Below are positions 26,269 through 60,981 of a stretch of DNA of 64,000 nucleotides, piece by piece. How positions within the stretch are numbered: position 1 is the first letter of the stretch; each line of letters begins with the position of its first letter. The DNA lies in the IMG/VR virus record IMGVR_UViG_3300036770_006296, positions 62,001 to 126,000 of that record. The stretch is one strand, 5' to 3'. The notes below the pieces were generated by a model. It was not told the DNA's origin, did not search any database, and saw only the letters and a program-made list of their open reading frames with translations. Made by a program: the position numbers and the translations under genes.

Positions 26269-26459
26269 TTTGTTTTGTTTGTTCATAGAAAAGGACCGGG
26301 GTTTTTACTTCGGTCTTTTTTTGTGGTCTGCTGTGTGGTTGCACTGCACATCTCCTGAGGAACCCCCGGAAGGATGCTAAAAAGTTTTCTTGGAAAATCA
26401 TTTTTTTCTTTATATAGATTTTTCTACATTTATTAGGTAACCAAATAAAAAATTATGTC

Positions 26460-27269
26460 ATGAAATTATTTGATGAACGCCAGGTGAAGATGATGAAATA
26501 TCTTTCCTCTGGACTTCCACCACAGAGTAGATGGCGGTACAATCCGGTAACAGACCTTATAGATATAGAGGGGGATTTCAATTGTGGATGGACGGGTTTT
26601 AAAGATTTTAGAGGAGTTAAATTTGGAAAGATCACTGGACATTTCGATTGTTCCGGTATAGGACTCACCAGTTTAATAGGAGCTCCTGAAGAGGTCGGAA
26701 AAGATTTCAATTGTTCGAAAAACAATTTAACTAGTCTTGAAGGTGCACCTAAAAAGGTTGGTTATAGTTTCAATTGTTCAAAAAACTCTCTAGAAAGCCT
26801 AGAAGGAGGTCCTGAATATGTTAGGGGAAATTATGATTGTTCGAGTAATAAGCTCGTTACTCTTAAAGGATCCCCTAAAGCTTTACGCAGGGGGAGTAAA
26901 TTTATTTGCTCCAATAATCTTTTAAAAGATTTAAACGGGTTAATAGATAATGATTTTATGGGATTTTTTACATGTAAACGCAATCCCCTTACTAGTCTGG
27001 AAGGAGCACCAATCAACATAGAACCTTATTGGGATGGAAGTTATGAAGGAAAAATTTCATATTATGGAAATAAAGGTGTTTCGGGAAAGGTGCTCGAATT
27101 AATTCATCTCACGATGATTGAAAAGAAAGTGCCATTTATTATCGCTCTAGGTATTCTTAAGAACGAGATAAAATCGAGCGATCTTAAGAAGCTACTTCCT
27201 TCGGATCAGGAGAACGTAGAAGATGTACTAAAAGGAGCTAGCATGTTAGCTAAATTTGAATCTTTCTAA
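26460..27269 (+). CDS. LRR-21 family protein with KG-tag
   Basis: FNCSKNNLTSLEGAPKKVG repeats; ends KGASMLAKFESF. Confidence 0.88.
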   Translation: MKLFDERQVKMMKYLSSGLPPQSRWRYNPVTDLIDIEGDFNCGWTGFKDFRGVKFGKITGHFDCSGIGLTSLIGAPEEVGKDFNCSKNNLTSLEGAPKKVGYSFNCSKNSLESLEGGPEYVRGNYDCSSNKLVTLKGSPKALRRGSKFICSNNLLKDLNGLIDNDFMGFFTCKRNPLTSLEGAPINIEPYWDGSYEGKISYYGNKGVSGKVLELIHLTMIEKKVPFIIALGILKNEIKSSDLKKLLPSDQENVEDVLKGASMLAKFESF

Positions 27270-27331
27270 GAATCATTTTTTTATTTAGGTAGATTTTTCT
27301 ATATTTATGATAACCAATTAAACTTCCAGTT

Positions 27332-27559
27332 ATGGAAATGAACTTCATTAAAGTTATAGACGAGAGAACAAGAGACACAGTAGGATTTGCTGTTGTTGAG
27401 AAAGGCTCTCTGGAAGAGTCAATGATAGTTGACCGCTTCATAGACGAGGGAATGATTTTTGTAGCCTCGAATGAAGAGGAATTTAGTAATTTTGATGGAG
27501 ACTTCGTGAAGAGGTTTGGTAATGGAATGTTTTGTACTCACGCACCAATGGCAGATTAA
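27332..27559 (+). CDS. hypothetical protein
   Basis: EP and leader. Confidence 0.7.
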   Translation: MEMNFIKVIDERTRDTVGFAVVEKGSLEESMIVDRFIDEGMIFVASNEEEFSNFDGDFVKRFGNGMFCTHAPMAD

Positions 27560-27560
27560 T

Positions 27561-27833
27561 ATGACAAATAACGAAAGAATAGAGGCTTTAATAGTTGATT
27601 TAGTTGCTAAGAGTCCTTCGCAGGTTAATGTATGTGATTTGTTAATCGACTACATTAAGACTTTAACAAAAGACGAGATTATTGAATTCGTTGACAGAAC
27701 TACAACTGAAGTTTGGCCAGCTAGGTTTGACGAAGAAAGAAGCGGGTGTTTACACAAGGAGACATATGCTGCTGTTCGTCACGAGTCCGGGATGGCTTTG
27801 TACCGATGTAAAAAATGTAACGCCAAGGTATAA
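27561..27833 (+). CDS. hypothetical protein with C-terminal Zn ribbon (start corrected)
   Basis: CLH...CKKC. Confidence 0.65.
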   Translation: MTNNERIEALIVDLVAKSPSQVNVCDLLIDYIKTLTKDEIIEFVDRTTTEVWPARFDEERSGCLHKETYAAVRHESGMALYRCKKCNAKV

Positions 27834-27873
27834 ATCATTTTTTTCTTTAGATAGAATTTTCTACATTTACAAT

Positions 27874-28164
27874 ATGGAAACATCAGTAATTATAACACCT
27901 AACCCTTATGGCTTCGGAAGGAACTGGAGCTTACTTGTTAAGACGCCAGAACACACCAAGAGTTTTTATCTTGGACAGGACGTAAAGTTTTGTTCGAGAG
28001 TTCTTGGTATGGAGCCAAGAGATGTCGTTGAGGCTATAGGTACTGGAGAGATCTCGGAAGGTCAACCAGGAAATAAGAAGCTCGCCGAGTTTATTTGTGA
28101 GTGTTTAGAATTAAATGAAACCAACGTCATGGAGTTAGAGCCATGGAGTTTAAGCGCAGAATAA
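27874..28164 (+). CDS. hypothetical protein (start corrected)
   Basis: ATG just after EP. Confidence 0.75.
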   Translation: METSVIITPNPYGFGRNWSLLVKTPEHTKSFYLGQDVKFCSRVLGMEPRDVVEAIGTGEISEGQPGNKKLAEFICECLELNETNVMELEPWSLSAE

Positions 28165-28165
28165 T

Positions 28166-28489
28166 ATGGAAAGGATATACGTAGCAATCATTAAAGGACC
28201 TAAGGAATATTTACCAGGAGGCATTAAGTTCGAGAAGTTCGAAATCCATCAACATGAGATAGACGACTTTTTAGAGGATGGCGAAGAGGGAGAGACCGAG
28301 GAGGATGCTATCCAATACTATAAGGAAGAGTATGCTGCGGAGTGGGAGCAACGATGGTGCTCAGTTACTTTCCTGAGTGAGTCTGAGTTTAATTCCCTCT
28401 ATGGAGCGGTTCAGGAATTCTTTATCGACAATGGGGATGACGGAGAAGAGGAAGAGCAAGAAGAAGACGAATGGCAAGATTGGAAGTAA
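28166..28489 (+). CDS. highly acidic protein
   Basis: E/D-rich throughout. Confidence 0.8.
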   Translation: MERIYVAIIKGPKEYLPGGIKFEKFEIHQHEIDDFLEDGEEGETEEDAIQYYKEEYAAEWEQRWCSVTFLSESEFNSLYGAVQEFFIDNGDDGEEEEQEEDEWQDWK

Positions 28490-28499
28490 ATTAAAAAAT

Positions 28500-28724
28500 A
28501 TGAGACAGGTAGATATTAAAATTTCTGGTAGGAAGATCGAAGGCTATCCTACAGTTACAAGAACTATAAAGTTCAATAACGTCGAAGAATTTATATCAAA
28601 GGCGGATGAAGCTATAGACGAAACTGATTTTGGTAAGGTTGATTGCTATGTCGATAACTTTGATAATGTATTTAACGATGAGGAGATTAAGCTTCTAGAG
28701 GAGCAATGGTTTATTATTGAATAA
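28500..28724 (+). CDS. acidic hypothetical protein (start corrected)
   Basis: MRQVDIKISG...; stop abuts EP. Confidence 0.7.
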   Translation: MRQVDIKISGRKIEGYPTVTRTIKFNNVEEFISKADEAIDETDFGKVDCYVDNFDNVFNDEEIKLLEEQWFIIE

Positions 28725-28764
28725 ATCATTTTTTTAATTAATTAGAATTTTCTATATTTGAGAT

Positions 28765-29256
28765 ATGGCAACAAGGAGTAGAATAGGAATAGTAAACGAG
28801 GACGGAACAGTTTCCTCAATATATTGTCACTGGGACGGATACGTATCTCACCACGGTCCACTCTTACTTACGCATTATACAGACCGTGAAAAGGTTAAAG
28901 CCCTTATCGAATTGGGAAGTATTAGTGTCTTAGCTCAACACGTTGAGCCGCCTTCAGTCGTTGACGAGAATGATATCGATGGTAAGAAGGGTGAGAGGAT
29001 GCTTAAGAGATTTGGAGTCATAGGAAAACATTCTTTCTACGATCCACTACCAGGTGTTACTGTTGCTTATCATCGAGACAGAGGAGAGGAATACATCAAA
29101 CCGAGAATTAATAAGTCGCTAGAGGATTATTTTCTAGCAGACAATGAAGAATATGGCTACGTCTTTACCCTTGAGGGTGAATGGCTAGTCAAGTCGGGGT
29201 ACAACGAAAGTGCTCCAATTAGACCAATCGCTGAGGTTTTAGCAGAAGAAACTTAG
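28765..29256 (+). CDS. conserved phage protein (TRSxIG...YCHWDGY) with internal KG-tag
   Basis: ...DGKKGERMLKRFGVIG... Confidence 0.8.
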   Translation: MATRSRIGIVNEDGTVSSIYCHWDGYVSHHGPLLLTHYTDREKVKALIELGSISVLAQHVEPPSVVDENDIDGKKGERMLKRFGVIGKHSFYDPLPGVTVAYHRDRGEEYIKPRINKSLEDYFLADNEEYGYVFTLEGEWLVKSGYNESAPIRPIAEVLAEET

Positions 29257-29462
29257 TGTTTAATTGGTTTAACGCTGAGGGGATCGAGAAATCGGTCCCT
29301 TTTTTTGTGTGCTGGTTTTTTTGCAGCATATGCTAGATTCCCGGGGGCTCCTCAGGAATCTCCCACGGTTGCGTGGTAATTTTTTTTAGAAATTTCTGGA
29401 AATCATTTTTTATATTACATAGAAGTTTCTACATTAGCTATGTAAATCAAAAAACGCTACCA

Positions 29463-29813
29463 ATGAAAAGCCATTGTACACACTGCGGAGCCATACATGA
29501 AAGAAAGAGTAAATTCTGCTCAAAGAAATGTAGCGATGCAGCCTACAGAGCCAGTAAGAAAGAGGAACCGATCGAGCCAAAGGCTTCAACATCCGACCCA
29601 GAAGTAGTGGTCGAGAAATTCACCAAAGCATTCGGTTTTCCTGTCAGACTATATTGGAACCGTAGGTTAGAGGGTAAGAACTCCTCTTGCGCTAAAGCCG
29701 GTACAGTACTCGAGTTCGAGCAGATAACAAAAGTGGGCGGCAAGGTGATCTACAGGGTAAGAAGGGGTAAGCGTAACTTCTTTACCTCAAGTCGAGAGAT
29801 TGAGGAAATTTAA
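29463..29813 (+). CDS. Zn-finger plus beta-rich C-terminal domain protein
   Basis: CTHCG...FCSKKC N-term; C-term homologous to 51704/55657/58436. Confidence 0.8.
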   Translation: MKSHCTHCGAIHERKSKFCSKKCSDAAYRASKKEEPIEPKASTSDPEVVVEKFTKAFGFPVRLYWNRRLEGKNSSCAKAGTVLEFEQITKVGGKVIYRVRRGKRNFFTSSREIEEI

Positions 29814-29907
29814 GAAAGCCATGGGGGCAAAAATAGCCTGGGTTAAACGCCCAGGCTTTTTTATGAAATCATTTTTTTAATTAAATAGAATTTTCTACAT
29901 TTACAAT

Positions 29908-30219
29908 ATGAACAAAAGGGAAAACAAAAGAGGTGAGTTATTAGTTTGGCCGGGAATTGGTCCTTGTGGTAGCACGCCAGCGGAAGTTAAAGAATTCGAG
30001 AATTATGTGAGTTCGGAGTTCAACATTAGGGTGGAGTTCGTACAGGATTTGGAACGGAAGGACGGTAACGTCGACACAATCATTCGGGTGTTTGCCGAGG
30101 ATGCTTGGGGATCGGACCTCATCTTTAGAATGTTCTGCGTACATGTGGGGATCTATCCGATTGAAATGATTAGTCGCACAGATTATGATGTTGTTTCGGC
30201 TTCAAAAATTTTCAAATAA
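29908..30219 (+). CDS. hypothetical protein
   Basis: EP upstream. Confidence 0.7.
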   Translation: MNKRENKRGELLVWPGIGPCGSTPAEVKEFENYVSSEFNIRVEFVQDLERKDGNVDTIIRVFAEDAWGSDLIFRMFCVHVGIYPIEMISRTDYDVVSASKIFK

Positions 30220-30291
30220 TTTCCAAAATCATTTTTTTTATCAAGTAGAATATTCTACTTTAGCAATGTAAACCAATAAACACAAATAAAA

Positions 30292-31314
30292 ATGGCAAGA
30301 ACAAAAAAAGCAGAAGGGTCGGTAACGACCGAGACAACGGCTAAGAAAGGTCTTAGTGAAGAGACAAAAGCAAAGATCTCTGAGGCGTTAAAACGCAGAA
30401 AGACTTCAGTGGTCGAAGCAGCGGAAGCGCTATCTCCTAAGTTGGTAGCGGATGAGTCCAAAATCAAGGAGGAAGGAAACATCGTTACTCTTAACGACTA
30501 CTTCAAAGTCGAGAAGGGGACTTTCGAGATACTCAAGCACAACATCGGCTATGGTATCAATACGATGCTTATCGGGGCAACGGGTACTGGAAAGACGGAA
30601 GTCGTGGCTAACATCGCTAAGGTGTTCAATGTTCCGCTGACTATCTTCGACATGGGTACAATGACCGATCCTGTAATGGGACTTGTGGGTACTCACGTCA
30701 TCACAGTTGAGAATGGGGTGACTAAGTCGGAGTTCAAACGCTCTCGCTTCTCGGAACTCATTCAGCAACCAGGTATCATACTCTTAGACGAGATCTCCCG
30801 AGCCGGAGCGATGGCTAACAACCTTCTCTTCCCTTGTCTCGACTTCCGTAGAGAGTTACCGATGGAGTACTCGTTCCACGACACAACTCCAATCCCGGTT
30901 CACCCACAGTGCGTATTCTTCTCAACGGCTAACATGGGAAGTCAATATACGGGAACTCACAAATTAGACCGTGCCTTACTTGACCGTTTCATGCTCATCG
31001 AAGTAGACTCGATCAAACCAGAGGACATCATCGCAACACTAACCGCAGAGTTTCCGAAAATCACTAAGACGAAAATCAAGAAGTTGGTAAGCGTGTTCAC
31101 CAAAATCAACAAGGAACACGACGAGTTCAAAATCTCGTTCAACCTCTCAGTTCGTCACCTTAAGACTATCGCCAAATTGGTCTCTAACGGCTTCACAATC
31201 TACGACGGTTATGTCGCTCTTTGTAAAGGTCTCGGTAGTCAAGAAGGTTTGAAAGCGATTAACGCAATCTTGGACGATGCTAAAACCTCAACGGATACAG
31301 ATACAGAATCCTAA
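30292..31314 (+). CDS. MoxR-class AAA+ ATPase (CobS/CbbQ/NorQ-like)
   Basis: GATGTGKT, ILLDEISR, NMGSQYTGTHKLDRALLDRF. Confidence 0.9.
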   Translation: MARTKKAEGSVTTETTAKKGLSEETKAKISEALKRRKTSVVEAAEALSPKLVADESKIKEEGNIVTLNDYFKVEKGTFEILKHNIGYGINTMLIGATGTGKTEVVANIAKVFNVPLTIFDMGTMTDPVMGLVGTHVITVENGVTKSEFKRSRFSELIQQPGIILLDEISRAGAMANNLLFPCLDFRRELPMEYSFHDTTPIPVHPQCVFFSTANMGSQYTGTHKLDRALLDRFMLIEVDSIKPEDIIATLTAEFPKITKTKIKKLVSVFTKINKEHDEFKISFNLSVRHLKTIAKLVSNGFTIYDGYVALCKGLGSQEGLKAINAILDDAKTSTDTDTES

Positions 31315-31433
31315 TTCGTAAGGACTCAACAGGACTGGCGGCAAAACACCGCCAGTCTTTTTTTTGAAATCATTTTTTTCTCTAAGTAGAATTTTCTATA
31401 TTAGCTATGTAAACCAATTAAAACAAAAAAACA

Positions 31434-32984
31434 ATGGGTAAGTATGGATATGGATCTTGGGGCTCAGGCTACGGTAGGAAGACTTGGTCTTCAACATCGG
31501 GCTGGGAGAACTCACACTACGGAGGGTACAATCGACTAATTTACGATTATCCCTTCATCAAGTTCGATTATAAGGCAAACATCGAAGTCTCGCAAGACTT
31601 AAGAACCCAATTAGGTATCTGGTCGGCGGAAAAGCTTATCAAGATGTATCTTATGAAATGTAAGGAGAAAGGACTTCTTAAACGTTTAATTCGTGAACGT
31701 ATAACTAAGAAAAACTTTCTTGGGCAGGAAAAACATTACGACGTTCTTAAGCTAGATAACGAAGTCGTTCTAGAAGCGGTGATGAAAGAGTTCAAAGAAT
31801 TTGCTCCTCTCTTCGACCACTATCGTAATGAGATACTTTCGAGTAGCCTACAAATCGAAGTTCCGCCACCAGGAAACGAAGGTGGAGGAGGACAAGGTAA
31901 AGGCGAAGGGGAAGACAAAAAAGAAGGCCAAGGTAAAGGAAAGGGTGAAGGCGAGGGAGAAGGTGAAGGAGAAGGTGAAGGTGAAGGTGAAGGAGAGGGC
32001 AAAGGTAAAGGACAAGGTAAAGGACAAGGCGAAGGGGAAGGCGAAGGGGAAGGCGAAGAAGGTAGAGGCGAGGGTAAAGGAAAACCGAGTAAGAAAGGCG
32101 GAGGTTGGGGACCTTCGGATGGTGATGCTCCGGACTTCAAAGAACTTGAACGAGTACTTAAGGAAATGTCGGAACAAAAACCTTTCGAGAGCTTTAAAGG
32201 TCTCGGAGCAGAATGTAACCCTAAATTCGTTCCACCAAAAAAGAATGCGAAAGACTACAAGTTCAAGACCGATGAGATTAGAAATGCCGAGATGATGCTC
32301 AAACAACTCGACATCAGTTTTGAACCAAAGAGTGACGAAGTAAAGAACCTTAAACTCGGTAAGCTTGACACTTCAAAATTGGCAGAAGTACCCGCAGGTA
32401 ATATCTCCGTCTACAAACAAACTTTGGAGGATCAAGATACGAAACCATTTGCGGTATGTGTGTTGGCAGACATGTCGGGTAGTATGCAAGGTGCTAGACT
32501 CGATACTCAACTTAAGGTACTTAACGCTTTATATCTTGCCTTAAGCGAAATTATACCGGAAGAGGACCTACACATTTACGGTCACAGTGGAAATTCGTCA
32601 GAACCTAAGATATACACCTTCTGTAATCCGTATCACCCAGACTACCGAAAGAATATTCAAGACTATTATAGGATAGAGAATAACACTAATTACGACGGGA
32701 TTGTTATAGAACAGGTACACAAAAAGATACGTGAGAAAACAGATCGCCCAGTAATTCTGATTAGTCTTTCTGACGGTCAACCTTGTGATAGCGTGGCAGA
32801 CATGAAACGAATTCTTGAAAGAGCTAGACGAGACTCATTCGTTACAGTAGGTATCGGTATTGGTACAGACTACGTCAAAAAACTCTACACTTATTCGAGA
32901 GTGGTACACGACGAAAAGCTACACGAAATGCCGAGAGAGGTAGCGGGAATTATCAACCATGTTGTTAAAGCCGAATTCAAATAA
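31434..32984 (+). CDS. vWA (MIDAS) protein, CobT-like, with (GE)n linker
   Basis: [13 protein letters not shown]; long GEGEGE tract. Confidence 0.88.
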
Positions 32985-33150
32985 ATCCATATCCATACCC
33001 GAGAAGGGGAAGACTTCGGTCTTCCCTTTTTTTTGTGGGCTAAACCTTAGTCCTGCCGGCAGATTCTCTGGGGAACCCCAGGAAACTGGATACAGAGATC
33101 ATTTTTTTCTTTAATTAGAATTTTCTACATTAGCTATGTAACCAATTAAT

Positions 33151-53253: not shown

Positions 53254-53490
53254 ATGAAGAAGGGAGATAGAATTAAGGTGACATTTACCAAAGACACATT
53301 ACTAGTTGTATACCCAAAGTCAGACAAGCGTTATAGGGAAGGGTGTGAAGAAATGTTTTTGGAGGGACAAACATTAGAATTTGAGATCTTAGAAATCAAG
53401 AACGAAGGTGAGACTATAGAAGTTAAATTTCTTAGCGAGCTTTATTCAATCCATTACATGGGAGTTATAAGTAATATTATTTTTGTTTGA
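53254..53490 (+). CDS. hypothetical protein
   Basis: EP upstream; 3' end overlaps an inverted gene. Confidence 0.6.
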   Translation: MKKGDRIKVTFTKDTLLVVYPKSDKRYREGCEEMFLEGQTLEFEILEIKNEGETIEVKFLSELYSIHYMGVISNIIFV

Positions 53491-53662
53491 GTTCTTCAAT
53501 AAAATTCAATATACTTTCCTCACCATCAATTGTTTTAACCGAGTCATCTAGATAAATAACAACAATTCTTGGCGGTAAATCGTTCTCCATAAATGATTGA
53601 ATTTTTTCTATTCCTTTAGCATCTAATATTGTTTCATCAATATCTTTTAAATAATCTTTCAT
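53477..53662 (-). CDS. hypothetical protein in inverted cassette
   Basis: Own TATATTTG promoter (~53711-53718, - strand) and A-rich leader. Confidence 0.7.
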   Translation of the reverse strand: MKDYLKDIDETILDAKGIEKIQSFMENDLPPRIVVIYLDDSVKTIDGEESILNFIEELKQK

Positions 53663-53931
53663 AATTTTCTTTTTTAATTGTTAAACAAAAATAATACATA
53701 CTTATAACAACAAATATAAGAAATAAATCTTACTTTGTCTATTTTTTAATGAAAAGATTTACTTCTCATATTTGCAACCGATAAAACTTTTTTATTCCCT
53801 TCTGGGTTTAAAAATAATGATACGCATGGGAGAAGACAGTATTTTAAAATTATCTAAAATCCCAAGGAATCATTTTTTTCTTTAGATAGAATTTTCTACA
53901 TTTGTATCGTAACCACTAAAAAATAAAAAAA

Positions 53932-54297
53932 ATGGATAATCAAGAAGAAGAAAACATAAGGAAGGGCAAAAGTATGCTAGTAAAATTTGGGGTGATTGAT
54001 CCCAGATTAGATAGAGCTGTTAGGAAATATTATAATGGAAGAAGATCAAACGATTCAGCTTTTGATGATATTTTTGAATTCTATTACGATAAAGGAGACC
54101 TTTCAGCCGCGGGTATAACTATAGCGGAGTACGATGAATTAGATTGGAATCCTAGCGTCAGTGTACGAGCGCAGGTTGTAAACTGTGCAGAGCTTGATGA
54201 TGAATTATTTGATTATCTAAGAGGTATTGTAGATCCTGATTGGTACGATGATGACGATGATGACGATGATGACGATGATGACGATGACGGATGGTAG
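53932..54297 (+). CDS. acidic protein, N-terminal KG-tag, poly-Asp tail
   Basis: IRKGKSMLVKFGVI...YDDDDDDDDDDDDDGW. Confidence 0.85.
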   Translation: MDNQEEENIRKGKSMLVKFGVIDPRLDRAVRKYYNGRRSNDSAFDDIFEFYYDKGDLSAAGITIAEYDELDWNPSVSVRAQVVNCAELDDELFDYLRGIVDPDWYDDDDDDDDDDDDDDGW

Positions 54298-54383
54298 AAA
54301 AAGAATTAAAAAGATTTGGAATCATTTTTATTATTGTAGAAGAATCCATATATTAGCTAAGTAAATCAATTAAACAAAATCAA

Positions 54384-54560
54384 ATGGAAAAACTAGCAGC
54401 AAAAATTAATCTAATTGTTGTAGCACTACTCGTTTTATCAGCAGCAGCGATCTTCTTCATCTCAGTGGTAAGAGGAGATTTAATAATTGGTATCATCGGA
54501 GGAGCATTAACTTGGATAGGAATACAAATCTTAAAAATCACAATCAATGAATCAGCGTAA
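54384..54560 (+). CDS. 58-aa two-TM peptide, not in track
   Basis: MEKLAAKINLIVVALLVL...; EP upstream. Confidence 0.65.
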   Translation: MEKLAAKINLIVVALLVLSAAAIFFISVVRGDLIIGIIGGALTWIGIQILKITINESA

Positions 54561-54768
54561 ACCAAACAAAACACTAGGAGACCTATACGTTGAGGTTGTC
54601 CTGGTAATAGGGATACCCTTAGGAATAGTAGCACTACTCAACTGGCTGACCCTATAATATAACGGGGTCCCCACCCGGAGGCCGCGTGCCTACGTGCGTA
54701 CGTGAGGAATAAATCAGAAAAAAACGGAATCATTTTTTTAACCAGAGCATTTTAGATACATTTACCTC

Positions 54769-55056
54769 ATGAACACTTACAAATTTAGAGCAGAATGCCT
54801 TCACGATGTGATACAATTCATGAGTCATGCTCCAGAGGTAATACAACAGATAGATGTACAAAAGGATGAAAGGTTTCCTGATTGCTATGTCACTCTTAAA
54901 ACCACCTCAGAGATGTCAGAAGTACTAAATAAAATACTTGAAATGCAAGGAGACGTTCACGTTATGTTTGAGAGTCTTCAACCAGAAGGGGAATACACAG
55001 GAGAAAGAATAAGAAGCTTTCATTCATCATCAAAAGACAACTTCATGGAGAAGTAA
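54769..55056 (+). CDS. hypothetical protein
   Basis: EP upstream. Confidence 0.75.
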   Translation: MNTYKFRAECLHDVIQFMSHAPEVIQQIDVQKDERFPDCYVTLKTTSEMSEVLNKILEMQGDVHVMFESLQPEGEYTGERIRSFHSSSKDNFMEK

Positions 55057-55294
55057 AAAAGACTATTCTGTGATTAGTTTAGTTTGATTAACACCCAAGA
55101 TAGGGATTCGGCTTCGGCTCGGATCCCTTTTTTGCGAGCCGAGGTTTTTTGACCTGGCCTGGATTAATCTCTGGGGAACCCCAGGAATCCTGATCCAGCA
55201 GATGTAAGAGAAGTGTAAACTTTTTTCAGAAATCATTTTTATTCCTGTAGAAAATTCTATATATTTGTATTGTTAATCAATCAAACAAAAATAA

Positions 55295-55444
55295 ATGAAA
55301 GCAGAAACAAAAAAGAAATTAGAATTCTTAATGGAATTAGGTTTAACCCAAAATGAAATTAATGAACTTCTAGATAATCAATCTATTCTTGATGAATCAA
55401 AAGAATTCAAAAAAGAAGAAGTTGAAGAAGATGAAGATTACTAA
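55295..55444 (+). CDS. 49-aa acidic peptide, not in track
   Basis: MKAETKKKLEFLMELG...EEDEDY; EP upstream, terminator downstream. Confidence 0.7.
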   Translation: MKAETKKKLEFLMELGLTQNEINELLDNQSILDESKEFKKEEVEEDEDY

Positions 55445-55656
55445 GGGGTTAGTAATAAAAAAGGGAAGGAGACTTAGGTCTCCTTTTTTTGTGGGGAAAA
55501 TCTAGACCAGCTAGATGCTCCTGCGGTGCCCCAGGAATCCTGATCCAAACCCCAATAAATTTTTTTTAGAAAATTCCACTTTTTTCCAAGAATCATTTTT
55601 TATATTAGAATATTCTACATATATTTGTATAGTTAATCAATTAAACAATATCAATT

Positions 55657-55968
55657 ATGAAAAAGGAAATGACAGCAGAACAAAAAGCAAAAAAGGCGGC
55701 AGCTAACAAGGCGTACAGAGAGCGCAAAAAAATGCAATCTCAAAACTGGATGGAACTCGACAAGTTCGAAATGAGTTTCGAGCATAAAGTTCGACTTTTC
55801 AAAAACCTCAAATTGGAAATCACAAATTCCTATTGCGCATCTCCGGGGACAGTTTTGAAATTTGAAAAACTCACTAATAACGATAACACAATCGTTTATC
55901 GGGTTCGCCGCACAGGTCGAAGAACTTTCTTCACCACCTCCGTCCACCTTCACGCTCCCGCTGAATAG
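55657..55968 (+). CDS. basic protein family member 2
   Basis: Near-identical to 51704..52006. Confidence 0.85.
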   Translation: MKKEMTAEQKAKKAAANKAYRERKKMQSQNWMELDKFEMSFEHKVRLFKNLKLEITNSYCASPGTVLKFEKLTNNDNTIVYRVRRTGRRTFFTTSVHLHAPAE

Positions 55969-56093
55969 CCGGGACTCACCATAGAAAGGAGCTTAGGCTC
56001 CTTTTTTTGTGCCCAAAGGTTTCTGGATGTAGGCTGAGATAAACTCCTGGGGCTCCTCAGGAAATTTTCACATCTTCCTTATCTATAAGATTT

Positions 56094-56198
56094 ATGGAAG
56101 AGATAGATAAAATAAAAAGATGGGGTTGTATAGGAATAGTATTCATTACTATCCTATGGACTTCACTTATCTACTGGGCATTGTCCAAAGCATTCTGA
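56094..56198 (+). CDS. 34-aa TM peptide, not in track
   Basis: MEEIDKIKRWGCIGIVFITILWTSLIYWALSKAF between two palindromes. Confidence 0.45.
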   Translation: MEEIDKIKRWGCIGIVFITILWTSLIYWALSKAF

Positions 56199-56304
56199 GG
56201 ATCCTCCGAGAATCCCAGCTGGCCCAGAAATAATAATCAGGAATCATTTTTTTATTTGTGGAAAAATCTATATATTAGCTTGTTAATCAATTAAACAAAA
56301 GCCA

Positions 56305-56460
56305 ATGTATTCTTTAGATTGTGATTATTACACAAAACAATTCCCATCCATCGATGATCTCATATCGGATATTATATCATCTGGCATGGACCCAAATTAT
56401 GTAATAACCTATAATGGTGTACCCATAGGTTATCAAGCTATTGAGCTAATTCAATTTTAA
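56305..56460 (+). CDS. 51-aa protein, not in track
   Basis: MYSLDCDYY...QAIELIQF; paralog of next ORF. Confidence 0.75.
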   Translation: MYSLDCDYYTKQFPSIDDLISDIISSGMDPNYVITYNGVPIGYQAIELIQF

Positions 56461-56517
56461 GAAATCATTTTTTTCTTCAAATAGATTTTTCTACATTTAC
56501 ATTATAAAACAAATTTT

Positions 56518-56757
56518 ATGTATTCATTAGACTGTGATTACTACAAAAAAGAATTCTCAACCCTTGATGAACTCTTGGACGATATTATACTATCTGGTAT
56601 GGACCCAAATTATTTAATAACATACAATGGGGCCACCTTCAACTACCAAGCTATTGAACTAATAACTGGACGTATGAGCCAGCATTTCCCGAATGTTAAC
56701 ATTACCAAAGAACTCATGATGACATTTTGCAGTTGGGTAAAGTCCCGGAAGAATTAA
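56518..56757 (+). CDS. paralog of 56305 with new C-terminus from an insertion
   Basis: 17-bp direct repeat at 56647-56663 and 56759-56775. Confidence 0.75.
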   Translation: MYSLDCDYYKKEFSTLDELLDDIILSGMDPNYLITYNGATFNYQAIELITGRMSQHFPNVNITKELMMTFCSWVKSRKN

Positions 56758-56845
56758 TCAAGCTATTGAACTAATTCAATTTTAAGAAATCATTTTTTTC
56801 TTCAAATAGATTTTTCTACATTTACATTATAAAACAAAGACCTAC

Positions 56846-57076
56846 ATGTTAATTTACACAATAATTTTTACCCTAGCTCTCTTGGTCCTAATAGCTACAA
56901 AAACGACAGGGATTGACCAACCCACACTAGATTATAAAGAGAGCTATGCAGCGGAGGTGAGTAATGCCAGCTACTTTACTCTGCCTCGAGGACAGCCCAG
57001 TAGATTGTGGGCTTCTATCATAACAAATAAATCACCGCCCCGTAACAAGGGTAAGCCCGGATATAATACAAGTTAA
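56846..57076 (+). CDS. small signal-peptide/TM protein
   Basis: Hydrophobic N-term; EP upstream. Confidence 0.6.
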   Translation: MLIYTIIFTLALLVLIATKTTGIDQPTLDYKESYAAEVSNASYFTLPRGQPSRLWASIITNKSPPRNKGKPGYNTS

Positions 57077-57204
57077 AGAAAGACCCTTATTACAGGGTCT
57101 TTTTTGTGGACTATTGTTTACAATAAACCTCCTATTGTAAACCACTGGGGCTCCGCAGGAAAATCAAGAAGAAGATAAGATATATATAGTATAAAAAACA
57201 AATT

Positions 57205-57645
57205 ATGAAACATATTAGGCTTTACGAATACTATTCTGAATTACCAACTTCATTCAGTGTAGCAGAGATCCAAAACATGTCGGAGACGGACTTTTTAACA
57301 AACCTTAAAATGTTAAAAGATAAGGGAGACGAAGAGCAGGCTTTTTCGTTATTACAAATTTGGATGAATCACCATAAAGATGCGGCGAACGACATGGATT
57401 TCAATGCGAAACTCGGAGGTATATTTCGTGACGTTTCTCTTGAATCAGATGACAGCCCTAAGTCTGGCAATTTCCTTCATGATAAAGCAGTGCAATTGAA
57501 CACTTATCTTGCTAAGAACAAACGTGAAGGCGTGGTAAAACAAATAGAAGAGGTAAAAAGAAATATAAAAAATTACGAAGAAATGCTTAGAGTGGCTAAA
57601 GATAGATTAGATAGATTAGAATTTGAAATGACAAAAACTATGTAA
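57205..57645 (+). CDS. CTS-bearing coiled-coil protein
   Basis: MKHIRLYEYYSE; LP at 57179. Confidence 0.8.
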   Translation: MKHIRLYEYYSELPTSFSVAEIQNMSETDFLTNLKMLKDKGDEEQAFSLLQIWMNHHKDAANDMDFNAKLGGIFRDVSLESDDSPKSGNFLHDKAVQLNTYLAKNKREGVVKQIEEVKRNIKNYEEMLRVAKDRLDRLEFEMTKTM

Positions 57646-57871
57646 TTTGAATTCATATAATAATAAGAAAGACTCTTAGGAGTCTTTTTTTGTGATCTAA
57701 ACCACTGGGGCTCCGCAGGAAATCCAATGGTAGATGTGATTTATACTCTCATGCCCCCTCCGGGGGGACGCGTGCGTACGTATGCACGCGTAGGCACTTT
57801 TTTCAGGAATCGTTTTTTTATCTGTAGAAAATTCCATACATTAGCTATGTTAATCAATTAAATAAATACAA

Positions 57872-58006
57872 ATGGAAAAGGCAGTAAATGTTTTAGCAGC
57901 AATTTGGGTAGGTGTTTTAATGTCAATGACAATCATCTCATTAGGCTATGCAATAGTTCAAGTTGTAACCGGCAATGTACATTCCACAGCAAGTTTTGAA
58001 TTTTAA
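57872..58006 (+). CDS. 44-aa TM peptide, not in track
   Basis: ...WVGVL...QVVTGNVHSTASFEF; paralog of 59097. Confidence 0.7.
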   Translation: MEKAVNVLAAIWVGVLMSMTIISLGYAIVQVVTGNVHSTASFEF

Positions 58007-58171
58007 ATGAAAACAACAATCACAAAAGAAGCCCTAAGAAAAGCCAGAATGGGCTCAGTAAGAGAAGACCAGAAAGCACAAGGTTTCTTTGATGGTAGAT
58101 TTGTAACAAGATGTGAGGAAGACAAAAAGAAATACACAAGAAAAGAGAAACACAAATCTAAATCCTACTAA
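58007..58171 (+). CDS. 54-aa basic peptide, ArfA-like C-terminal pattern
   Basis: GFFDGRFVTRCEEDKKKYTRKEKHK. Confidence 0.6.
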   Translation: MKTTITKEALRKARMGSVREDQKAQGFFDGRFVTRCEEDKKKYTRKEKHKSKSY

Positions 58172-58435
58172 ACAAAAACAAAATCTTTTAAACCCTAGGT
58201 TCGGCCTAGGGTTTTTTTGTGGGCTAAAAATCCCAAGCTATGGTAAATCCTCCGAGGCACCCCAGGAACTTTTCCATAGATTTATTTTTTATATTTCTCT
58301 ATTTCTCCCATGCGGCACCCCAGAGTAACCCTATAAATTTTTTTTAGAAATTTCCACTTTTTTCCAAGAATCATTTTTTAGTTTGTAGAAAAGTCTATAT
58401 ATTAGCTAAGTTAATCAATTAAACAAAAACAAATT

Positions 58436-58753
58436 ATGAAAAACACAGAAAAAAAACCAGTTGCTAAAAAAGCTACAAAAACCACTAAAGTTTCTAACAC
58501 CCCTGATTGGATGACTTTGGACAAGTTCGAAATGAGTTTCACCCACAAAGTTAGATTATTTAGAAATCTAAAATTGGAAACCACAAACTCCTACTGTGCA
58601 AGCCCAGGGACTTCCCTAAAGTTTGAAAAAATCAAAAATGAAGATAATACAATTGTCTTCCGGGTTCGCCGCAATGGCCGCCGCACCTTCTTCACCACCA
58701 ACGCGGAACTCCAGGCGCCAGCTGAAATCCCCGCTGAAATCCCCGCTGAATAA
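58436..58753 (+). CDS. basic protein family member 3
   Basis: DWMTLDKFEMSF...CASPGTSLKFE...RTFFTT. Confidence 0.85.
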   Translation: MKNTEKKPVAKKATKTTKVSNTPDWMTLDKFEMSFTHKVRLFRNLKLETTNSYCASPGTSLKFEKIKNEDNTIVFRVRRNGRRTFFTTNAELQAPAEIPAEIPAE

Positions 58754-58896
58754 CCGGGGTTTCACAAAACTTCAAAAGACCCTTCGGGGTCTTTTTTTGT
58801 GACCAAATTTTAGGACAGATCCTAATCCTCCTGAGGCACCCCTGGAACTTTACCATATATTCAGTTTTTATATTTAAAAAAAATTCTTATATTTGT

Positions 58897-58958
58897 AGTT
58901 CATAAAATATTTATTCTTTGGAGTAAGCCAGGAACCCTAGATTTATCTAGGGTTTCTT
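58897..58958 (+). ncRNA. candidate small RNA, copy 1
   Basis: TATATTTG 58888-58895, ORF-less body, terminator 58930-58958. Confidence 0.5.
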
Positions 58959-59096
58959 GTGTGTAAAGAAATCTAGATCTATGGTAAATCTCCTGCGGAA
59001 CCCCAGGAAAAGAATCCAAAAAGATTCAAGAAATCGTTTTTATCTTTGTAGAAAAATCCATATATTTATATAGTTAATCAATTAAACAAAATAAAA

Positions 59097-59228
59097 ATGA
59101 AAACAGCAAATGTAATTGGAATGGCTTGGGTAGGAATTTTAATAGCAACAGTTATAGTTGCTTTAGGTTTCACAGTTTATCAAGTATGCACGGGGAACTA
59201 CCACGGCACAGCAAGTTTTGAGTTTTAA
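59097..59228 (+). CDS. 43-aa TM peptide, not in track
   Basis: ...WVGIL...QVCTGNYHGTASFEF. Confidence 0.7.
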   Translation: MKTANVIGMAWVGILIATVIVALGFTVYQVCTGNYHGTASFEF

Positions 59229-59270
59229 TTAAAGTTTTGAATTTCAATTAAAAAAAATTCTTATATTTGT

Positions 59271-59332
59271 AGTTCATAAAATATTTATTCTTTGGGATAA
59301 ACAAGAAACCCTAGATTCATCTAGGGTTTTCT
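59271..59332 (+). ncRNA. candidate small RNA, copy 2
   Basis: TATATTTG 59262-59269; near-identical body; terminator 59303-59332. Confidence 0.5.
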
Positions 59333-59470
59333 GTGTGTAAAGAAATCTAAATCTATGGTAAAACTCCTGCGGCGCCTCAGGGATGAAGAATCAAAAAAGA
59401 TTCAAGAATCATTTTTATCTTCGTAGAAAAATCCATATATTTATAATGTTAATCAATTAAAATCTATCAC

Positions 59471-59542
59471 ATGAAAAAACCACTTGTAATCTTCATCACA
59501 CCAAATGGATTAATGGTTATAGAAGATATCATAGCTAACTAA
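59471..59542 (+). CDS. 23-aa peptide
   Basis: MKKPLVIFITPNGLMVIEDIIAN between EP and terminator. Confidence 0.45.
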   Translation: MKKPLVIFITPNGLMVIEDIIAN

Positions 59543-59662
59543 CACAACCACACATCAGAAATCAAAAGGGAGGATTGTATCTTCCCTTTTTTTGTTTAAC
59601 AATTTTTAAGAATCTATTAGACAACCGAGGAGGCACCCCACGAATATATAATAGACCAATGT

Positions 59663-60046
59663 ATGGTTAAAGTGCCAGTGAGTATAGGAGAACTAATTGA
59701 TAAGTTATCAATCCTCCAAGTTAAAAAGACAAAAGTCAAATCACAAGAGAAATTATCATTTATAGAGAAAGAGTATAATCTCTTATATGAGATGAGTTGT
59801 GATTATCTAAAAAACAATGACATTCAAAACACATTTAATGAATTAATAGCAATCAATCTTGCTCTTTGGGAAATAGAAGATTCACTAAGAGTAATAGAAA
59901 GCACAAAACAATTTGATGCCCATTTCATTGAATTAGCAAGAAGTGTTTACTACACCAATGATGAGAGATTTAGACTCAAAGATAAAATCAACTCTCTTAC
60001 ACATTCAGAAATCAAAGAACAAAAAGATTACCAAGGCTATCTATAA
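59663..60046 (+). CDS. DUF6165 family protein
   Basis: VPVSIGELIDKLSILQVK...LWEIED...ARSVYYTNDERF..K..IN. Confidence 0.8.
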   Translation: MVKVPVSIGELIDKLSILQVKKTKVKSQEKLSFIEKEYNLLYEMSCDYLKNNDIQNTFNELIAINLALWEIEDSLRVIESTKQFDAHFIELARSVYYTNDERFRLKDKINSLTHSEIKEQKDYQGYL

Positions 60047-60176
60047 ATTCCCTGCGGAGCCTCAGGGACTCTTCATTAATTTGCAAATGCCTAAGAAAAT
60101 AATAGATAGAATCTTCTCTGGAATCATTTTTTTATTTGGAGTATAATGAATATATTTACTCTATAACACACAACAC

Positions 60177-60806
60177 ATGATAGCAACAATAATAGTTATA
60201 ATAAACATAGTACTTCTAGAAGTCATCCTAAGTATAGATAATGCAGCAGTGATGGCAACCATGGTTAAAAAGCTTCCACAATCCCAACAAAAGAAAGCCC
60301 TCACCTATGGTATCTTAGGAGCATACCTCTTCAGAGGACTTGCACTCCTCTTTGCATCCCTACTCCTCTCCATAGCATGGCTGAAAATAGTCGGAGGCGC
60401 ATATCTGTTCTATATAGGTGTCAAAAGCCTCTCCCCTAAAACACCAGAAGGAGAAATTAAATCATCTCCCTCATTCTGGACCACAGTACTATCAATAGAA
60501 GTAATGGACCTTGTCTTTAGTATAGATAATGTCTTAGCTGCAGTAAGCTTCACCAAAAATCTCAACCTCATTATAGCAGGAGTATTCATAGGCATCCTTG
60601 GTATCAGATTTGCCACCACTAAATTCATCAACATCATCAATCAAAACCCACAGATAGAAAAAATAGCATACATAGTTATATCAGCACTAGGACTAAAACT
60701 CATCCTCTCCTATTTCTTACCATCCCTAAACACTGAATCAGTAGACCTAGCCTTCTCTATCCTCACTCTAGCAGCATTTACCATCCCACTAATCAAAAAG
60801 AGATAA
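60177..60806 (+). CDS. TerC family membrane protein
   Basis: LEVILSIDNA...ALTYGILGAYLFR...DLVFSIDNVLAA. Confidence 0.9.
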   Translation: MIATIIVIINIVLLEVILSIDNAAVMATMVKKLPQSQQKKALTYGILGAYLFRGLALLFASLLLSIAWLKIVGGAYLFYIGVKSLSPKTPEGEIKSSPSFWTTVLSIEVMDLVFSIDNVLAAVSFTKNLNLIIAGVFIGILGIRFATTKFINIINQNPQIEKIAYIVISALGLKLILSYFLPSLNTESVDLAFSILTLAAFTIPLIKKR

Positions 60807-60981
60807 AATAACACCTCTATTATACAAGGGCCTTTTAGGCCCTTTTTTGTGACCCCACTTTTTGCCAACTCTTATCACTTCTTTCTCTGGGGCTCCTCAG
60901 AGGGCTAAAGCTACCCAAGCAAGATTAAGCTCCCTGAGGCACCCTAGCGAAACCCCTCATCAACCCAAATATTAACCCCAC

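What the first reader, a model, noticed from the sequence alone, without database searches (positions are those of the whole stretch)
26354..60950. Untranscribed 16-bp palindrome CCTGNGG-NN-CCNCAGG between terminators and promoters
Seen: ~27 copies, usually ~25-45 nt after a terminator and ~15-40 nt before an EP, becoming denser towards 61 kb. N positions vary independently of pairing (e.g. CCTGCGG-AA-CCCCAGG), which favours protein recognition over a hairpin. Inference: operator for global early shut-off, a parS/matS-like organising site, or a recombination site for cassette exchange.
Basis: partly seen in the sequence, partly recalled or inferred. Interest (0 to 1): 0.65.

Follow-up and report, generated by a model that had tools for sequence, protein, structure and literature searches.

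The report
Terminator-linked GC box in phage early region
A short GC-rich DNA box sits about 40 bases behind nearly every terminator in the early-gene region of an uncultured 207-kb phage and its relatives, and is most likely a docking site for a DNA-binding protein that marks the borders between early transcription units.

Summary
The repeat is real.

Four related phage lineages (five contigs) change the picture. Only a 10-bp core is conserved: G(A/G)GG-NN-CCCC. The 16-bp palindrome is a feature of this phage alone.

The core is asymmetric, mostly co-oriented with the genes (42:7), and sometimes exactly inverted in place. It shows no compensatory changes, and its hairpin potential vanishes in the relatives. 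This points to a protein site on double-stranded DNA, not a hairpin.

Its position is fixed relative to the terminator: T-run, a GTG box, then the core 32-47 nt on (mode 39-40). Its position relative to the promoter is loose (13-55 nt or more, no helical phasing). About 33 of the 51 early promoters have no box. Two convergent terminators each carry one with no promoter between them.

My best reading is a stoperator-like boundary or roadblock site. The candidate binders are two conserved HTH/Myb proteins encoded at the head of the region. This is inferred, not shown.

A recombination site is disfavoured. No recombinase was found, and homology breakpoints fall at promoters. Transcription status could not be tested.

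The parts
26354..26369 (+). GC box copy
29341..29356 (+). GC box copy
   Evidence: 1 mismatch; core 37 nt after GTG; promoter 44 nt on
33067..33082 (+). GC box copy
   Evidence: 1 mismatch; core 35 nt after GTG; variant promoter follows
35529..35544 (+). GC box copy
   Evidence: 2 mismatches; 40 nt after GTG; promoter 13 nt on
37486..37501 (+). GC box copy without an adjacent terminator
   Evidence: Exact match; preceded by short direct repeats and a GC-rich element, with no early-type promoter after it
39201..39216 (+). GC box copy in a compact cassette
   Evidence: 1 mismatch; T-run 39162-39167, GTG box from 39168, core 36 nt after GTG; promoter at 39230, 13 nt on
42644..42659 (+). GC box copy
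   Evidence: 1 mismatch; 36 nt after GTG; promoter 13 nt on
44113..44128 (+). GC box copy
   Evidence: 1 mismatch; 40 nt after GTG; promoter 13 nt on
47095..47110 (+). GC box copy
   Evidence: 1 mismatch; 42 nt after GTG; promoter 39 nt on, with a 12-bp palindrome at 47127 in between
51005..51020 (+). GC box copy
   Evidence: 1 mismatch; 40 nt after GTG; next promoter only at 51121
51573..51588 (+). GC box copy
   Evidence: 1 mismatch; 40 nt after GTG; promoter 51 nt on
52083..52098 (+). GC box copy
   Evidence: 1 mismatch; 34 nt after GTG; promoter 13 nt on
53140..53155 (+). GC box copy
   Evidence: 1 mismatch; 39 nt after GTG; promoter 38 nt on
55170..55185 (+). GC box copy
   Evidence: 1 mismatch; 39 nt after GCG; promoter 45 nt on
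55520..55535 (+). GC box copy
   Evidence: Exact match; 32 nt after GTG; promoter 55 nt on
56046..56061 (+). GC box copy
   Evidence: Exact match; 40 nt after GTG; no early-type promoter within 180 nt
57144..57159 (+). GC box copy
   Evidence: 1 mismatch; 41 nt after GTG; the gene starts 46 nt on with no early-type promoter
57704..57719 (+). GC box copy, unusually close to its terminator
   Evidence: 1 mismatch; core only 15 nt after the T-run
58251..58266 (+). GC box copy
   Evidence: 2 mismatches; 35 nt after GTG
58309..58324 (+). Degenerate second copy in the same spacer
   Evidence: 2 mismatches; 58 nt after the copy at 58251; promoter 44 nt on
58830..58845 (+). GC box copy
   Evidence: 1 mismatch; 34 nt after GTG
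58992..59007 (+). GC box copy after a weak terminator
   Evidence: Exact match; follows a hairpin with an interrupted T-run and GTG; promoter 24 nt on
59366..59381 (+). GC box copy after a weak terminator
   Evidence: Exact match; same short unit as at 58992; promoter 25 nt on
59627..59642 (+). Degenerate GC box copy
   Evidence: Core only; 36 nt after the T-run at 59587-59593
60051..60066 (+). GC box copy without a terminator
   Evidence: Exact match; directly after the stop codon of ORF 59663-60046; promoter 55 nt on
60886..60901 (+). GC box copy of the last plus-strand terminator
   Evidence: 2 mismatches; 40 nt after GTG; faces a convergent terminator, with no promoter after it
60933..60948 (-). 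GC box copy belonging to a minus-strand terminator
   Evidence: 2 mismatches; lies downstream of the GTG of the minus-strand terminator at about 60987-61010, at a spacing like that of the plus-strand modules
39130..39181 (+). Example of the early-region terminator type: GC-rich hairpin, T-run, then a GTG box
   Evidence: Of 28 plus-strand terminator-like T-run hits in the early region (two of them internal T-runs), 21 have GTG, GCG or CGT after the T-run, against 1 of 21 elsewhere with GTG. The box consensus is shared with the relatives.
21100..60170 (+). 51 copies of the early promoter, about 45 bp each: AATCATTTTT box, spacer with TAGAA..TTCTA, then a -7-like box
   Evidence: All 51 are on the plus strand. 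The box TAnnTT[TA][GA] sits at offset 29 in 49 of 51. Only 17-18 have a GC box within 75 nt upstream.
20827..20842 (+). Degenerate GC box at the left border of the region
   Evidence: 2 mismatches; conserved at the same place in G003 and G005
20860..20970 (+). Iteron array (CTKGGAWT-like units, 10-11 bp period) upstream of the first early genes
   Evidence: the array is conserved in G001, G002, G005 and G008
22925..23045 (+). Second array of about 11-bp units, ending in a degenerate GC box at 23028
21161..21532 (+). Candidate binder 1: 123-aa Myb/HTH protein with an invariant C-terminal tail
   Evidence: Matches phrog_323 'D5-like transcriptional regulator' at 3.5e-9, plus weak HTH_38, Myb and GcrA hits. 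Syntenic homologues in G001, G002 and G005.
21553..22197 (+). Candidate binder 2: 214-aa protein with two three-helix domains
   Evidence: HTH_Tnp_1 at 7.7e-6 (residues 7-42) and phrog_323 at 2.9e-7 (residues 70-136). The AF2 model shows helical bundles at 7-48 and 90-129. Conserved in G001, G002 and G005.

Best explanation
The palindrome is this phage's version of a conserved GC box, G(A/G)GG-NN-CCCC with weaker flanking bases. The box belongs to the downstream half of a composite early terminator: GC hairpin, T-run, a GTG(K)G(C)TAAGGTTT box, about 20-25 variable bases, then the GC box.

I take it to be a recognition site on double-stranded DNA for a sequence-specific protein. It lies in the gap that neither a terminating polymerase nor a promoter-bound polymerase covers.

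The most likely job is to mark and insulate the borders of the roughly 25 tandem early transcription units. The bound protein would stop polymerases that read through the terminator. It could also seed a timed silencing of the early region, much as repressors act at mycobacteriophage stoperators.

The likeliest binders are the two conserved HTH/Myb-type early proteins encoded between the iteron arrays at the head of the region (window 21161-22197).

Shown: the motif, its confinement to the early region, its conservation across lineages, its coupling to terminators, the absence of hairpin covariation, and the inverted copies. Inferred: that a protein binds it, which protein, and the roadblock or insulator role.
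For: Enrichment and confinement: 31 copies against 0.45 expected, and 31 of 33 genome-wide copies lie in one region. The core occurs 33 times against 2.1 expected, with 31 outside ORFs.

Same architecture in relatives found by DNA pattern: G001, G002, G005 and G006/G008. There are 77 terminator-linked modules. The GTG-to-core distance has a mode of 39-40, or 45-47 in G008.

Only the core is invariant. The outer pairs of the 16-mer are Watson-Crick in 100% and 68% of copies here but in 15-52% in relatives. The N/N pair is Watson-Crick in 0-23% of copies in relatives.

Orientation is 42:7, with exact reverse-complement copies at the standard distance.

Hairpin energy z-score is -2.4 here and about 0 in G005 and G008.

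At orthologous G001/G002 junctions the core is 99% identical, against 77% and 59% for the flanks.

Terminators outside the early region have neither the GTG box nor the GC box.

Convergent terminators at 60.84 and 60.99 kb each carry a box, with no promoter between them.

Two HTH/Myb proteins are conserved and syntenic next to the arrays.

Precedent: asymmetric intergenic stoperators bound by a monomer with two DNA-binding domains (PMC9283540).
Against: No binding data exist, and the binder is chosen only by position and domain type. phrog_323 is a promiscuous model that matched 13 of 14 control genomes.

The box starts about 35 nt after the T-run. That is too far for a bound protein to hold a polymerase on the T-run itself. 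A roadblock there would stall read-through polymerases 15-20 nt past the terminator, not assist release.

Three terminators abut a promoter directly with no box (25501, 29857, 31358), so the box is not needed for termination or initiation.

The terminator-to-box distance spreads over about one helical turn, so no strict geometry is imposed.

A few copies have no terminator (37486, 60051).

Shared descent of duplicated cassettes could explain part of the fixed spacing.
Confidence: 0.45

Rival explanations
1. The box is a promoter operator. A regulator bound there switches the neighbouring early promoter on or off, for example as a global early shut-off.
For: In the most compact cassettes the box ends 13 nt before the promoter's upstream box (7 copies here, 5 in G001). 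By my estimate of the start site, that puts its centre near -60. A D5-like regulator label fits a shut-off factor.
Against: About 33 of 51 early promoters have no box. Distances to the promoter range from 13 to over 55 nt with no helical phasing (P 0.06-0.66 on unique distances). Boxes occur after terminators that have no promoter downstream. The position is tighter relative to the terminator than to the promoter.
Confidence: 0.15
2. The box is an organising, anchoring or decoy site. A phage or host protein uses the only polymerase-free DNA in this dense region as landing pads for condensation, bridging, replication or titration of a host factor, with no direct role in transcription.
For: The box lies exactly in the gap between the terminator and promoter footprints. 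Boxes cluster at both borders of the region. Inverted copies are tolerated.
Against: No ParB-type protein was found. The box is confined to the early region rather than spread along the genome. The strong orientation bias of 42:7 is not expected for a pure landing pad.
Confidence: 0.12
3. The box is a recombination site for cassette exchange, either site-specific (inverted arms around a 2-bp centre, as at serine-recombinase sites) or a homology patch as in PeSL cassettes.
For: It sits at the junction of promoter-ORF-terminator units. In this phage it has 7-bp arms around a 2-bp centre. Gene content differs between relatives at these junctions.
Against: No serine or tyrosine recombinase, Y1 transposase or TnpB was found in the 81%-complete genome. 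Twelve of 20 G001/G002 homology breakpoints lie within 60 nt of a promoter, and 6 within 2 nt of its first base. Only 5 of 20 lie near a box. The arms are not symmetric in the relatives.
Confidence: 0.08
4. The box acts as a hairpin in RNA or single-stranded DNA: a back-up terminator, a processing site, or a hairpin promoter.
For: In this phage the commonest form can fold into a 5-bp stem with a 4-nt loop. Mean MFE is -7.1 kcal/mol, z = -2.4.
Against: There are no compensatory changes. The N/N pair is mismatched in 47-100% of copies. Folding z is about 0 in G005 and G008. Exact inverted copies exist. The box follows strong terminators, so little RNA should contain it. No Rfam match was found.
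Confidence: 0.07
5. The box has no function of its own. It is a conserved stretch carried along as terminator-promoter cassettes were copied and homogenised.
For: Cassettes within one genome resemble each other more than cassettes in other genomes do: the centre is AA here and CG in G008. Some cassettes are near-duplicates, such as 47095 and 53140.
Against: Inside the same cassettes the hairpin stems and the spacer vary freely while the core does not. The core is 99% identical against 59-77% for the flanks at orthologous junctions. The core persists in lineages whose early proteins share only about 30-60% identity or are undetectable.
Confidence: 0.08

Closest known systems
Stoperators of cluster A mycobacteriophages (L5 gp71-type repressors)
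   Same: More than 20 copies of a short asymmetric site lie in short intergenic spaces, mostly in one orientation relative to transcription. They are read by a phage protein, and the solved repressor is a monomer with two DNA-binding domains (PMC9283540). Here there are about 27 copies with 42:7 orientation, and one candidate binder has two three-helix domains.
   Different: Stoperators lie inside transcribed operons and act on elongating polymerase in a prophage. These boxes lie behind intrinsic terminators, in a phage where no integrase was found. The box in this phage is nearly symmetric. No structural match to the repressor was found.
PeSL cassettes (promoter-early stem-loop) of T4-type phages
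   Same: Both are composite terminator and early-promoter units repeated between small variable genes. Here homology breakpoints fall at the promoters, and PeSLs are likewise found next to insertions, deletions and gene replacements (PMC4122927).
   Different: As described, PeSLs are only a stem-loop plus a sigma-70-type promoter. Here a third conserved element lies between them, tied to the terminator. The promoter is not sigma-70-like. No T4-type capsid or portal gene was found.
Roadblock terminators with a protein site downstream of a T-rich release element (yeast Pol I with Reb1, mouse TTF-I); from my own knowledge
   Same: A DNA-bound protein site sits at a set distance downstream of a T-rich release element, at the border between tandem transcription units and close to the next promoter.
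   Different: In those systems the site is about 12-20 bp from the release point, so the polymerase pauses on the T stretch. Here it is about 35-45 bp away, and the terminator has its own hairpin. The polymerases and kingdoms also differ.
KorA/KorB operators of plasmid RK2; from my own knowledge
   Same: A dozen or so palindromic sites lie at varying distances from promoters and give one protein global control of many units.
   Different: KorB is a ParB-family protein, and none was found here. The RK2 sites are not tied to terminators.

Membership tests
PeSL cassette | Stem-loop terminator placed just upstream of an early promoter, repeated between small variable genes | tested here: met
   28 plus-strand terminator-like hits and 51 promoters in 21-61 kb. 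G001/G002 breakpoints fall at the promoters.
PeSL cassette | Sigma-70-type -35/-10 early promoter | tested here: not met
   Sigma-70-like sites are fewer than chance, 32 against 53. The promoters carry a TAnnTT[TA][GA] box at a fixed offset.
PeSL cassette | Host genome is a T4-type phage | tested here: not met
   No Gp23 or T4 portal match was found in the 81%-complete genome. The Gp23 search had no positive control.
PeSL cassette | Mini-circle formation between neighbouring cassettes | not testable with these tools
   This needs PCR or reads from infected cells.
Stoperator system | Many copies of an asymmetric site in short intergenic spaces, oriented with transcription | tested here: met
   Left half mostly GAGG and right half CCCC in the relatives; orientation 42:7. 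31 of 33 copies lie outside ORFs.
Stoperator system | Sites lie within transcribed DNA and stop elongation | tested here: inconclusive
   The sites follow strong intrinsic terminators. Only read-through polymerases would meet them, and no RNA data were available.
Stoperator system | Repressor with an HTH plus a Stoperator domain | tested here: not met
   The model of gp21553 has two three-helix domains, but it has no PDB match at E <= 0.001. No sequence match in the PDB either.
Serine-recombinase crossover site | Inverted arms around a 2-bp centre | tested here: inconclusive
   True in this phage, but the arms are not symmetric in G001, G002, G005 or G008.
Serine-recombinase crossover site | A recombinase gene in the genome | tested here: not met
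   No Resolvase or Phage_integrase match.
parS/ParB or KorB operator | A ParB-family binder | tested here: not met
   No ParB_N match.
Structured RNA element or hairpin | Base pairs kept through compensatory changes | tested here: not met
   The variable pair is mostly mismatched and the invariant pairs never vary. Folding z is about 0 in two lineages. No Rfam match.
REP/PATE-type mobile palindrome | A Y1 (RAYT/IS200-type) transposase or TnpB | tested here: not met
   No Y1_Tnp or TnpB zinc-ribbon match.

The most novel reading that the evidence does not exclude
A family of large uncultured phages, probably infecting Bacteroidota, uses a dedicated post-terminator DNA element. A phage protein bound about 40 bp behind each early terminator would seal some 25 tandem transcription units from one another and from the next promoter. 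That would be a bacterial-virus counterpart of the protein-backed terminators of eukaryotic rDNA, and a lytic-phage cousin of stoperators.
Probability: 0.25. Interest if true: 0.7.

Novelty: new variant of a known kind. Interest (0 to 1): 0.5.

Why it matters
Repeated terminator-promoter cassettes are known in T4-type phages. Genome-wide repressor sites are known in mycobacteriophages. A conserved third element that travels with the terminator rather than the promoter has not been described to my knowledge.

If a protein binds it, this would be a simple and portable way to insulate very strong tandem promoters, and a new handle on how large phages time their early genes. The system is also easy to test. 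The site is 10-16 bp, the two candidate binders are small, and the cassettes are compact enough for reporter and in vitro transcription assays.

Tried and rejected
- **Short palindromes in the spacer between the GTG box and the GC box.** They looked striking by eye. The longest inverted repeat is 4.1 against 3.5 in shuffles, and a downstream control gives 4.3 against 3.6, so I dropped this.
- **Helical phasing of box and promoter.** Not significant on unique distances.
- **GTG box plus GC box as a two-part promoter on either strand.** The spacing varies from 19 to 31 nt, so I rejected it.
- **ECF-type -35 (GGAAC) reading.** The centre is CG in G008 and there is no fixed downstream partner, so I rejected it.
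- **Pairing of the GC box with the GTG box.** No covariation when the centre changes, by inspection of the rows.
- **Recombinase, ParB, Y1 transposase and TnpB searches.** All negative.
- **Rfam scan of 20-64 kb.** Nothing meaningful.
- **Megablast of 6 kb against the phage collection.** Only an 86-bp match. tblastn with the sigma factor gave no close relative.
- **Fold search with the gp21553 model.** Nothing at E <= 0.001. PDB sequence searches gave nothing useful.
- **Literature.** One paper search failed on a term that was too short and one found nothing.

Full report
**What the window is.** The window is bases 62001-126000 of a single 206,617-bp virus contig with 34.9% G+C. CheckV rates the contig 81% complete.

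From about 21 kb to 61 kb nearly all genes are on the plus strand and most are small. Recognisable products include:
- an AAA_5 ATPase and a VWA protein of the CobS/CobT kind, and a sigma-70-family protein;
- TerC, WYL_2 and zinc-ribbon proteins;
- elsewhere in the genome, ribonucleotide reductase, a type II topoisomerase-like protein, a GAF-PAS histidine kinase and a TROVE protein.

Only 1 of 57 early genes has a Shine-Dalgarno-like tetramer, and the bases before the start codons are A-rich. Sigma-70-type promoter matches are fewer than chance. From my own knowledge of Bacteroidota promoters (TTTG at -33, TAnnTTTG at -7), this points to a Bacteroidota-type host. The host was not identified.

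In the whole genome there are 33, of which 31 lie in window 15-61 kb. The commonest form is (A/T)CTGGGGAACCCCAGG, present 11 times. The looser core G.GG..CC.C occurs 33 times in 20-62 kb against 2.1 in shuffles, and 31 of the 33 lie outside ORFs. Nine copies lie in 26-50 kb and 18 in 51-61 kb, so density does rise towards 61 kb, where the transcription units are shortest.

**The cassette around it.** Three elements recur.
- *A terminator of a special type.* It is a GC-rich hairpin, six to eight T, then GTG and a box close to GTGKGCTAAGGTTT. Of 28 plus-strand terminator-like T-run hits in the early region (two of them internal T-runs), 21 have GTG, GCG or CGT after the T-run. Of 21 elsewhere in the genome, only one has GTG and none has the GC box.
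- *The GC box.* Its core begins 32-42 nt after the GTG.
- *The early promoter.* This is a 45-bp element present 51 times, all on the plus strand: AATCATTTTT, a spacer containing TAGAA..TTCTA, and a TAnnTT[TA][GA] box at offset 29 in 49 of 51 copies.

Only 17-18 of the 51 promoters have a GC box within 75 nt upstream. These are the promoters that follow a terminator. Promoters that follow a gene directly have none.

**Relatives.** No close relative is in the annotated phage collection. DNA-pattern scans of IMG/VR found several:
- the same phage again (L001);
- four further lineages with the same promoter type and the same terminator tail: G001 (248 kb), G002 (130 kb), G005 (191 kb) and G006/G008;
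- G003, which holds the left border of a near-identical phage.

In each of these genomes the box is confined to one stretch of 20-35 kb. Across the five genomes I collected 77 terminator-linked modules.

**What is actually conserved.** Only the core is invariant: G, then A or G, GG, two free bases, CC, C (rarely T), C.
There the box reads CTGAGGAACCCCCG (G001, G002), nnGAGGAACCCCCG (G005) or nnGAGGCGCCCC (G008).
- The N/N pair is Watson-Crick in 53% of copies here and in 0-23% in the relatives.
- The left half is mostly GAGG and the right half CCCC, so the box is asymmetric. By its AA or TT centre it points the same way as the genes in 42 modules and the other way in 7.
- The inverted ones include exact reverse complements of the 14-mer consensus at the usual distance from the terminator.
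- The centre is AA in four genomes and CG in all 14 modules of G008.

Predicted hairpin energy is better than shuffles only here (z = -2.4). It is weaker in G001/G002 (-1.2) and absent in G005 and G008 (-0.1, +0.3). At orthologous junctions of G001 and G002 the core is 99% identical, while 30-nt flanks are 77% and 59% identical (one of the nine pairs was mis-registered, which can only lower the core figure).

Together these results argue for selection on a sequence read as double-stranded DNA, not on a fold. The 16-bp palindrome of this phage can be read as two overlapping copies of GGWWCCCCAG, one on each strand.

**Tied to the terminator, not the promoter.**
- The GTG-to-core distance has a mode of 39-40 in four genomes and 45-47 in G008.
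- The distance to the promoter runs from 13 to over 55 nt here and up to 97 nt in relatives. It shows no helical phasing (Rayleigh test on unique distances, P 0.06-0.66).
- Boxes follow terminators that have no early-type promoter after them (56046, 57144, 58830).
- At 60.84-61.0 kb a plus-strand and a minus-strand terminator converge. Each has its own GTG box and GC box (60886, 60933) and there is no promoter between them.
- Conversely, three terminators abut a promoter directly with no box (25501, 29857, 31358). The box is therefore an add-on, not a requirement of either signal.

In the most compact cassettes the spacing is about 35 nt from T-run to palindrome and 13 nt from palindrome to promoter. 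That places the box in the only stretch that neither a terminating polymerase nor a promoter-bound polymerase should cover. This last point rests on general knowledge of polymerase footprints and was not measured here.

**Candidate binders.** The early region opens with about 800 bp of non-coding DNA, followed by an array of CTKGGAWT-like units with a 10-11 bp period (20860-20970). A second array lies at 22925-23045. Both arrays include degenerate GC boxes, and the arrays are conserved in the relatives.

Between them lie two genes behind a promoter with a perfect TAnnTTTG box.
- gp21161 (123 aa) has a Myb/HTH domain. Its last 22 residues are identical in all four lineages.
- gp21553 (214 aa) has an HTH_Tnp_1-type domain at residues 7-42 and a second three-helix domain at 90-129, joined by a disordered linker.

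Both match phrog_323, 'D5-like transcriptional regulator', and they are the only such matches in the genome. That model is promiscuous, however. G008 has a different Myb-like ORF. Nothing links these proteins to the box beyond position, domain type and conservation. The fold search gave no significant match.

**Tests of the other ideas.**
- *Recombination.* No serine or tyrosine recombinase, Y1 transposase or TnpB was found. Of 20 homology block ends between G001 and G002, 12 lie within 60 nt of a promoter (3.2 expected) and 6 lie within 2 nt of its first base. Only 5 lie within 60 nt of a box (1.5 expected). Shuffling in this family therefore appears to use the promoters, much as PeSL cassettes lie beside rearrangements in T4-type phages (PMC4122927), rather than the box.
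- *parS-like site.* No ParB was found.
- *RNA family.* None was found.

**Comparison with known systems.** The cassettes work like PeSLs but fail two of their defining features: a sigma-70 promoter and a T4-type genome. They also carry an extra element.

The box most resembles mycobacteriophage stoperators in copy number, asymmetry, intergenic position and orientation bias, and perhaps in having a two-domain binder (PMC9283540). It differs in lying behind intrinsic terminators and in a phage without a detectable integrase.

The layout also recalls eukaryotic Pol I terminators backed by a bound protein, but the distance here is larger (my own knowledge).

**Verdict.** This is a real, selected, lineage-wide DNA motif. 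It is very likely a protein site, and it belongs to the terminator side of the early cassettes. Its function is not shown.

I commit to a boundary or roadblock role with a phage HTH protein as the most likely mechanism (0.45). A promoter operator, an organising site, a recombination site, a hairpin and a passenger sequence are the rivals.

Noticed in passing
window 21100-60170, plus strand: There are 51 copies of a 45-bp early promoter with a TAnnTT[TA][GA] box at a fixed offset. Almost no Shine-Dalgarno sequences are present (1 of 57 genes). Both features suggest a Bacteroidota-type host. The spacer holds its own small palindrome, TAGAA..TTCTA.
   Followed up: partly
window 20060-21010 and 22925-23045: About 800 bp of non-coding DNA with several short repeat families is followed by iteron arrays with a 10-11 bp period, at the point where gene direction and cumulative GC skew turn. 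This could be an origin or an entry or packaging signal. The arrays are conserved in G001, G002, G005 and G008.
   Followed up: partly
window about 22255-22300, 37396-37448, 43590-43640, 51070-51115, 54660-54712, 57745-57800: A second intergenic repeat of about 45 nt is GC-rich, with a GGGGTCC/CCAGGRGG part and an ACGCGT/ACGTGCGT-type near-palindrome. It often replaces the terminator in front of a promoter. It is also present in G001, G005 and G008.
   Followed up: no
window 47127-47138 and 53172-53183: The perfect 12-bp palindrome AACCTATAGGTT, followed by a T-rich run, lies between the GC box and the promoter. The same element occurs at equivalent places in G001 and G005.
   Followed up: no
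window 37440-37485: Direct repeats of CTGAAAACACCT lie just upstream of a GC box and of the conserved zinc-ribbon gene 37595-38005, which has no early-type promoter. Similar repeats flank a GC box in G001, G005 and G008. This may be a different promoter class.
   Followed up: no
window 58846-58990 and 59220-59365 (plus strand); 61099 to about 60987 (minus strand): These are very short units with a promoter-like start and a terminator but no ORF of note: two near-duplicate units of about 145 nt, and a unit of about 75 nt on the minus strand driven by an early-type promoter. They may be small RNAs. Rfam finds nothing.
   Followed up: partly
window 21161-21532: The last 22 residues of this small Myb/HTH protein are identical in four lineages whose remaining sequence is 52-62% identical. 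This looks like a docking peptide for another protein.
   Followed up: partly
window 33151-33867, 39293-39889, 39930-40688, 44512-45372: This is a paralogous gene family. The 3' ends of the genes are alike and run straight into an early promoter. Relatives hit the same loci in G002 and G005.
   Followed up: no
window 53477-53790, minus strand: A 61-aa minus-strand ORF has a perfect TATATTTG box upstream, in the middle of the plus-strand region. Eighty-six bases of its upstream region (53696-53781) are 97.7% identical to an unrelated 462-kb uncultured phage record, LR756500.1.
   Followed up: partly
window 50075-50920; 30292-32984; genome 166706-168472 and 196605-198230: The phage encodes a full-length sigma-70-family protein (regions 1.2, 2, 3, 4), a CobS/CobT-like AAA plus VWA pair, a GAF-PAS histidine kinase and a TROVE (Ro-like) protein.
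   Followed up: no
window 16318, 17494, 18557 and ORFs 15253-20056, minus strand: A run of about ten similar-sized minus-strand ORFs (115-231 aa) contains three near-identical internal stretches picked up by my terminator scan. This suggests a tandem paralogue array just left of the early region.
   Followed up: no
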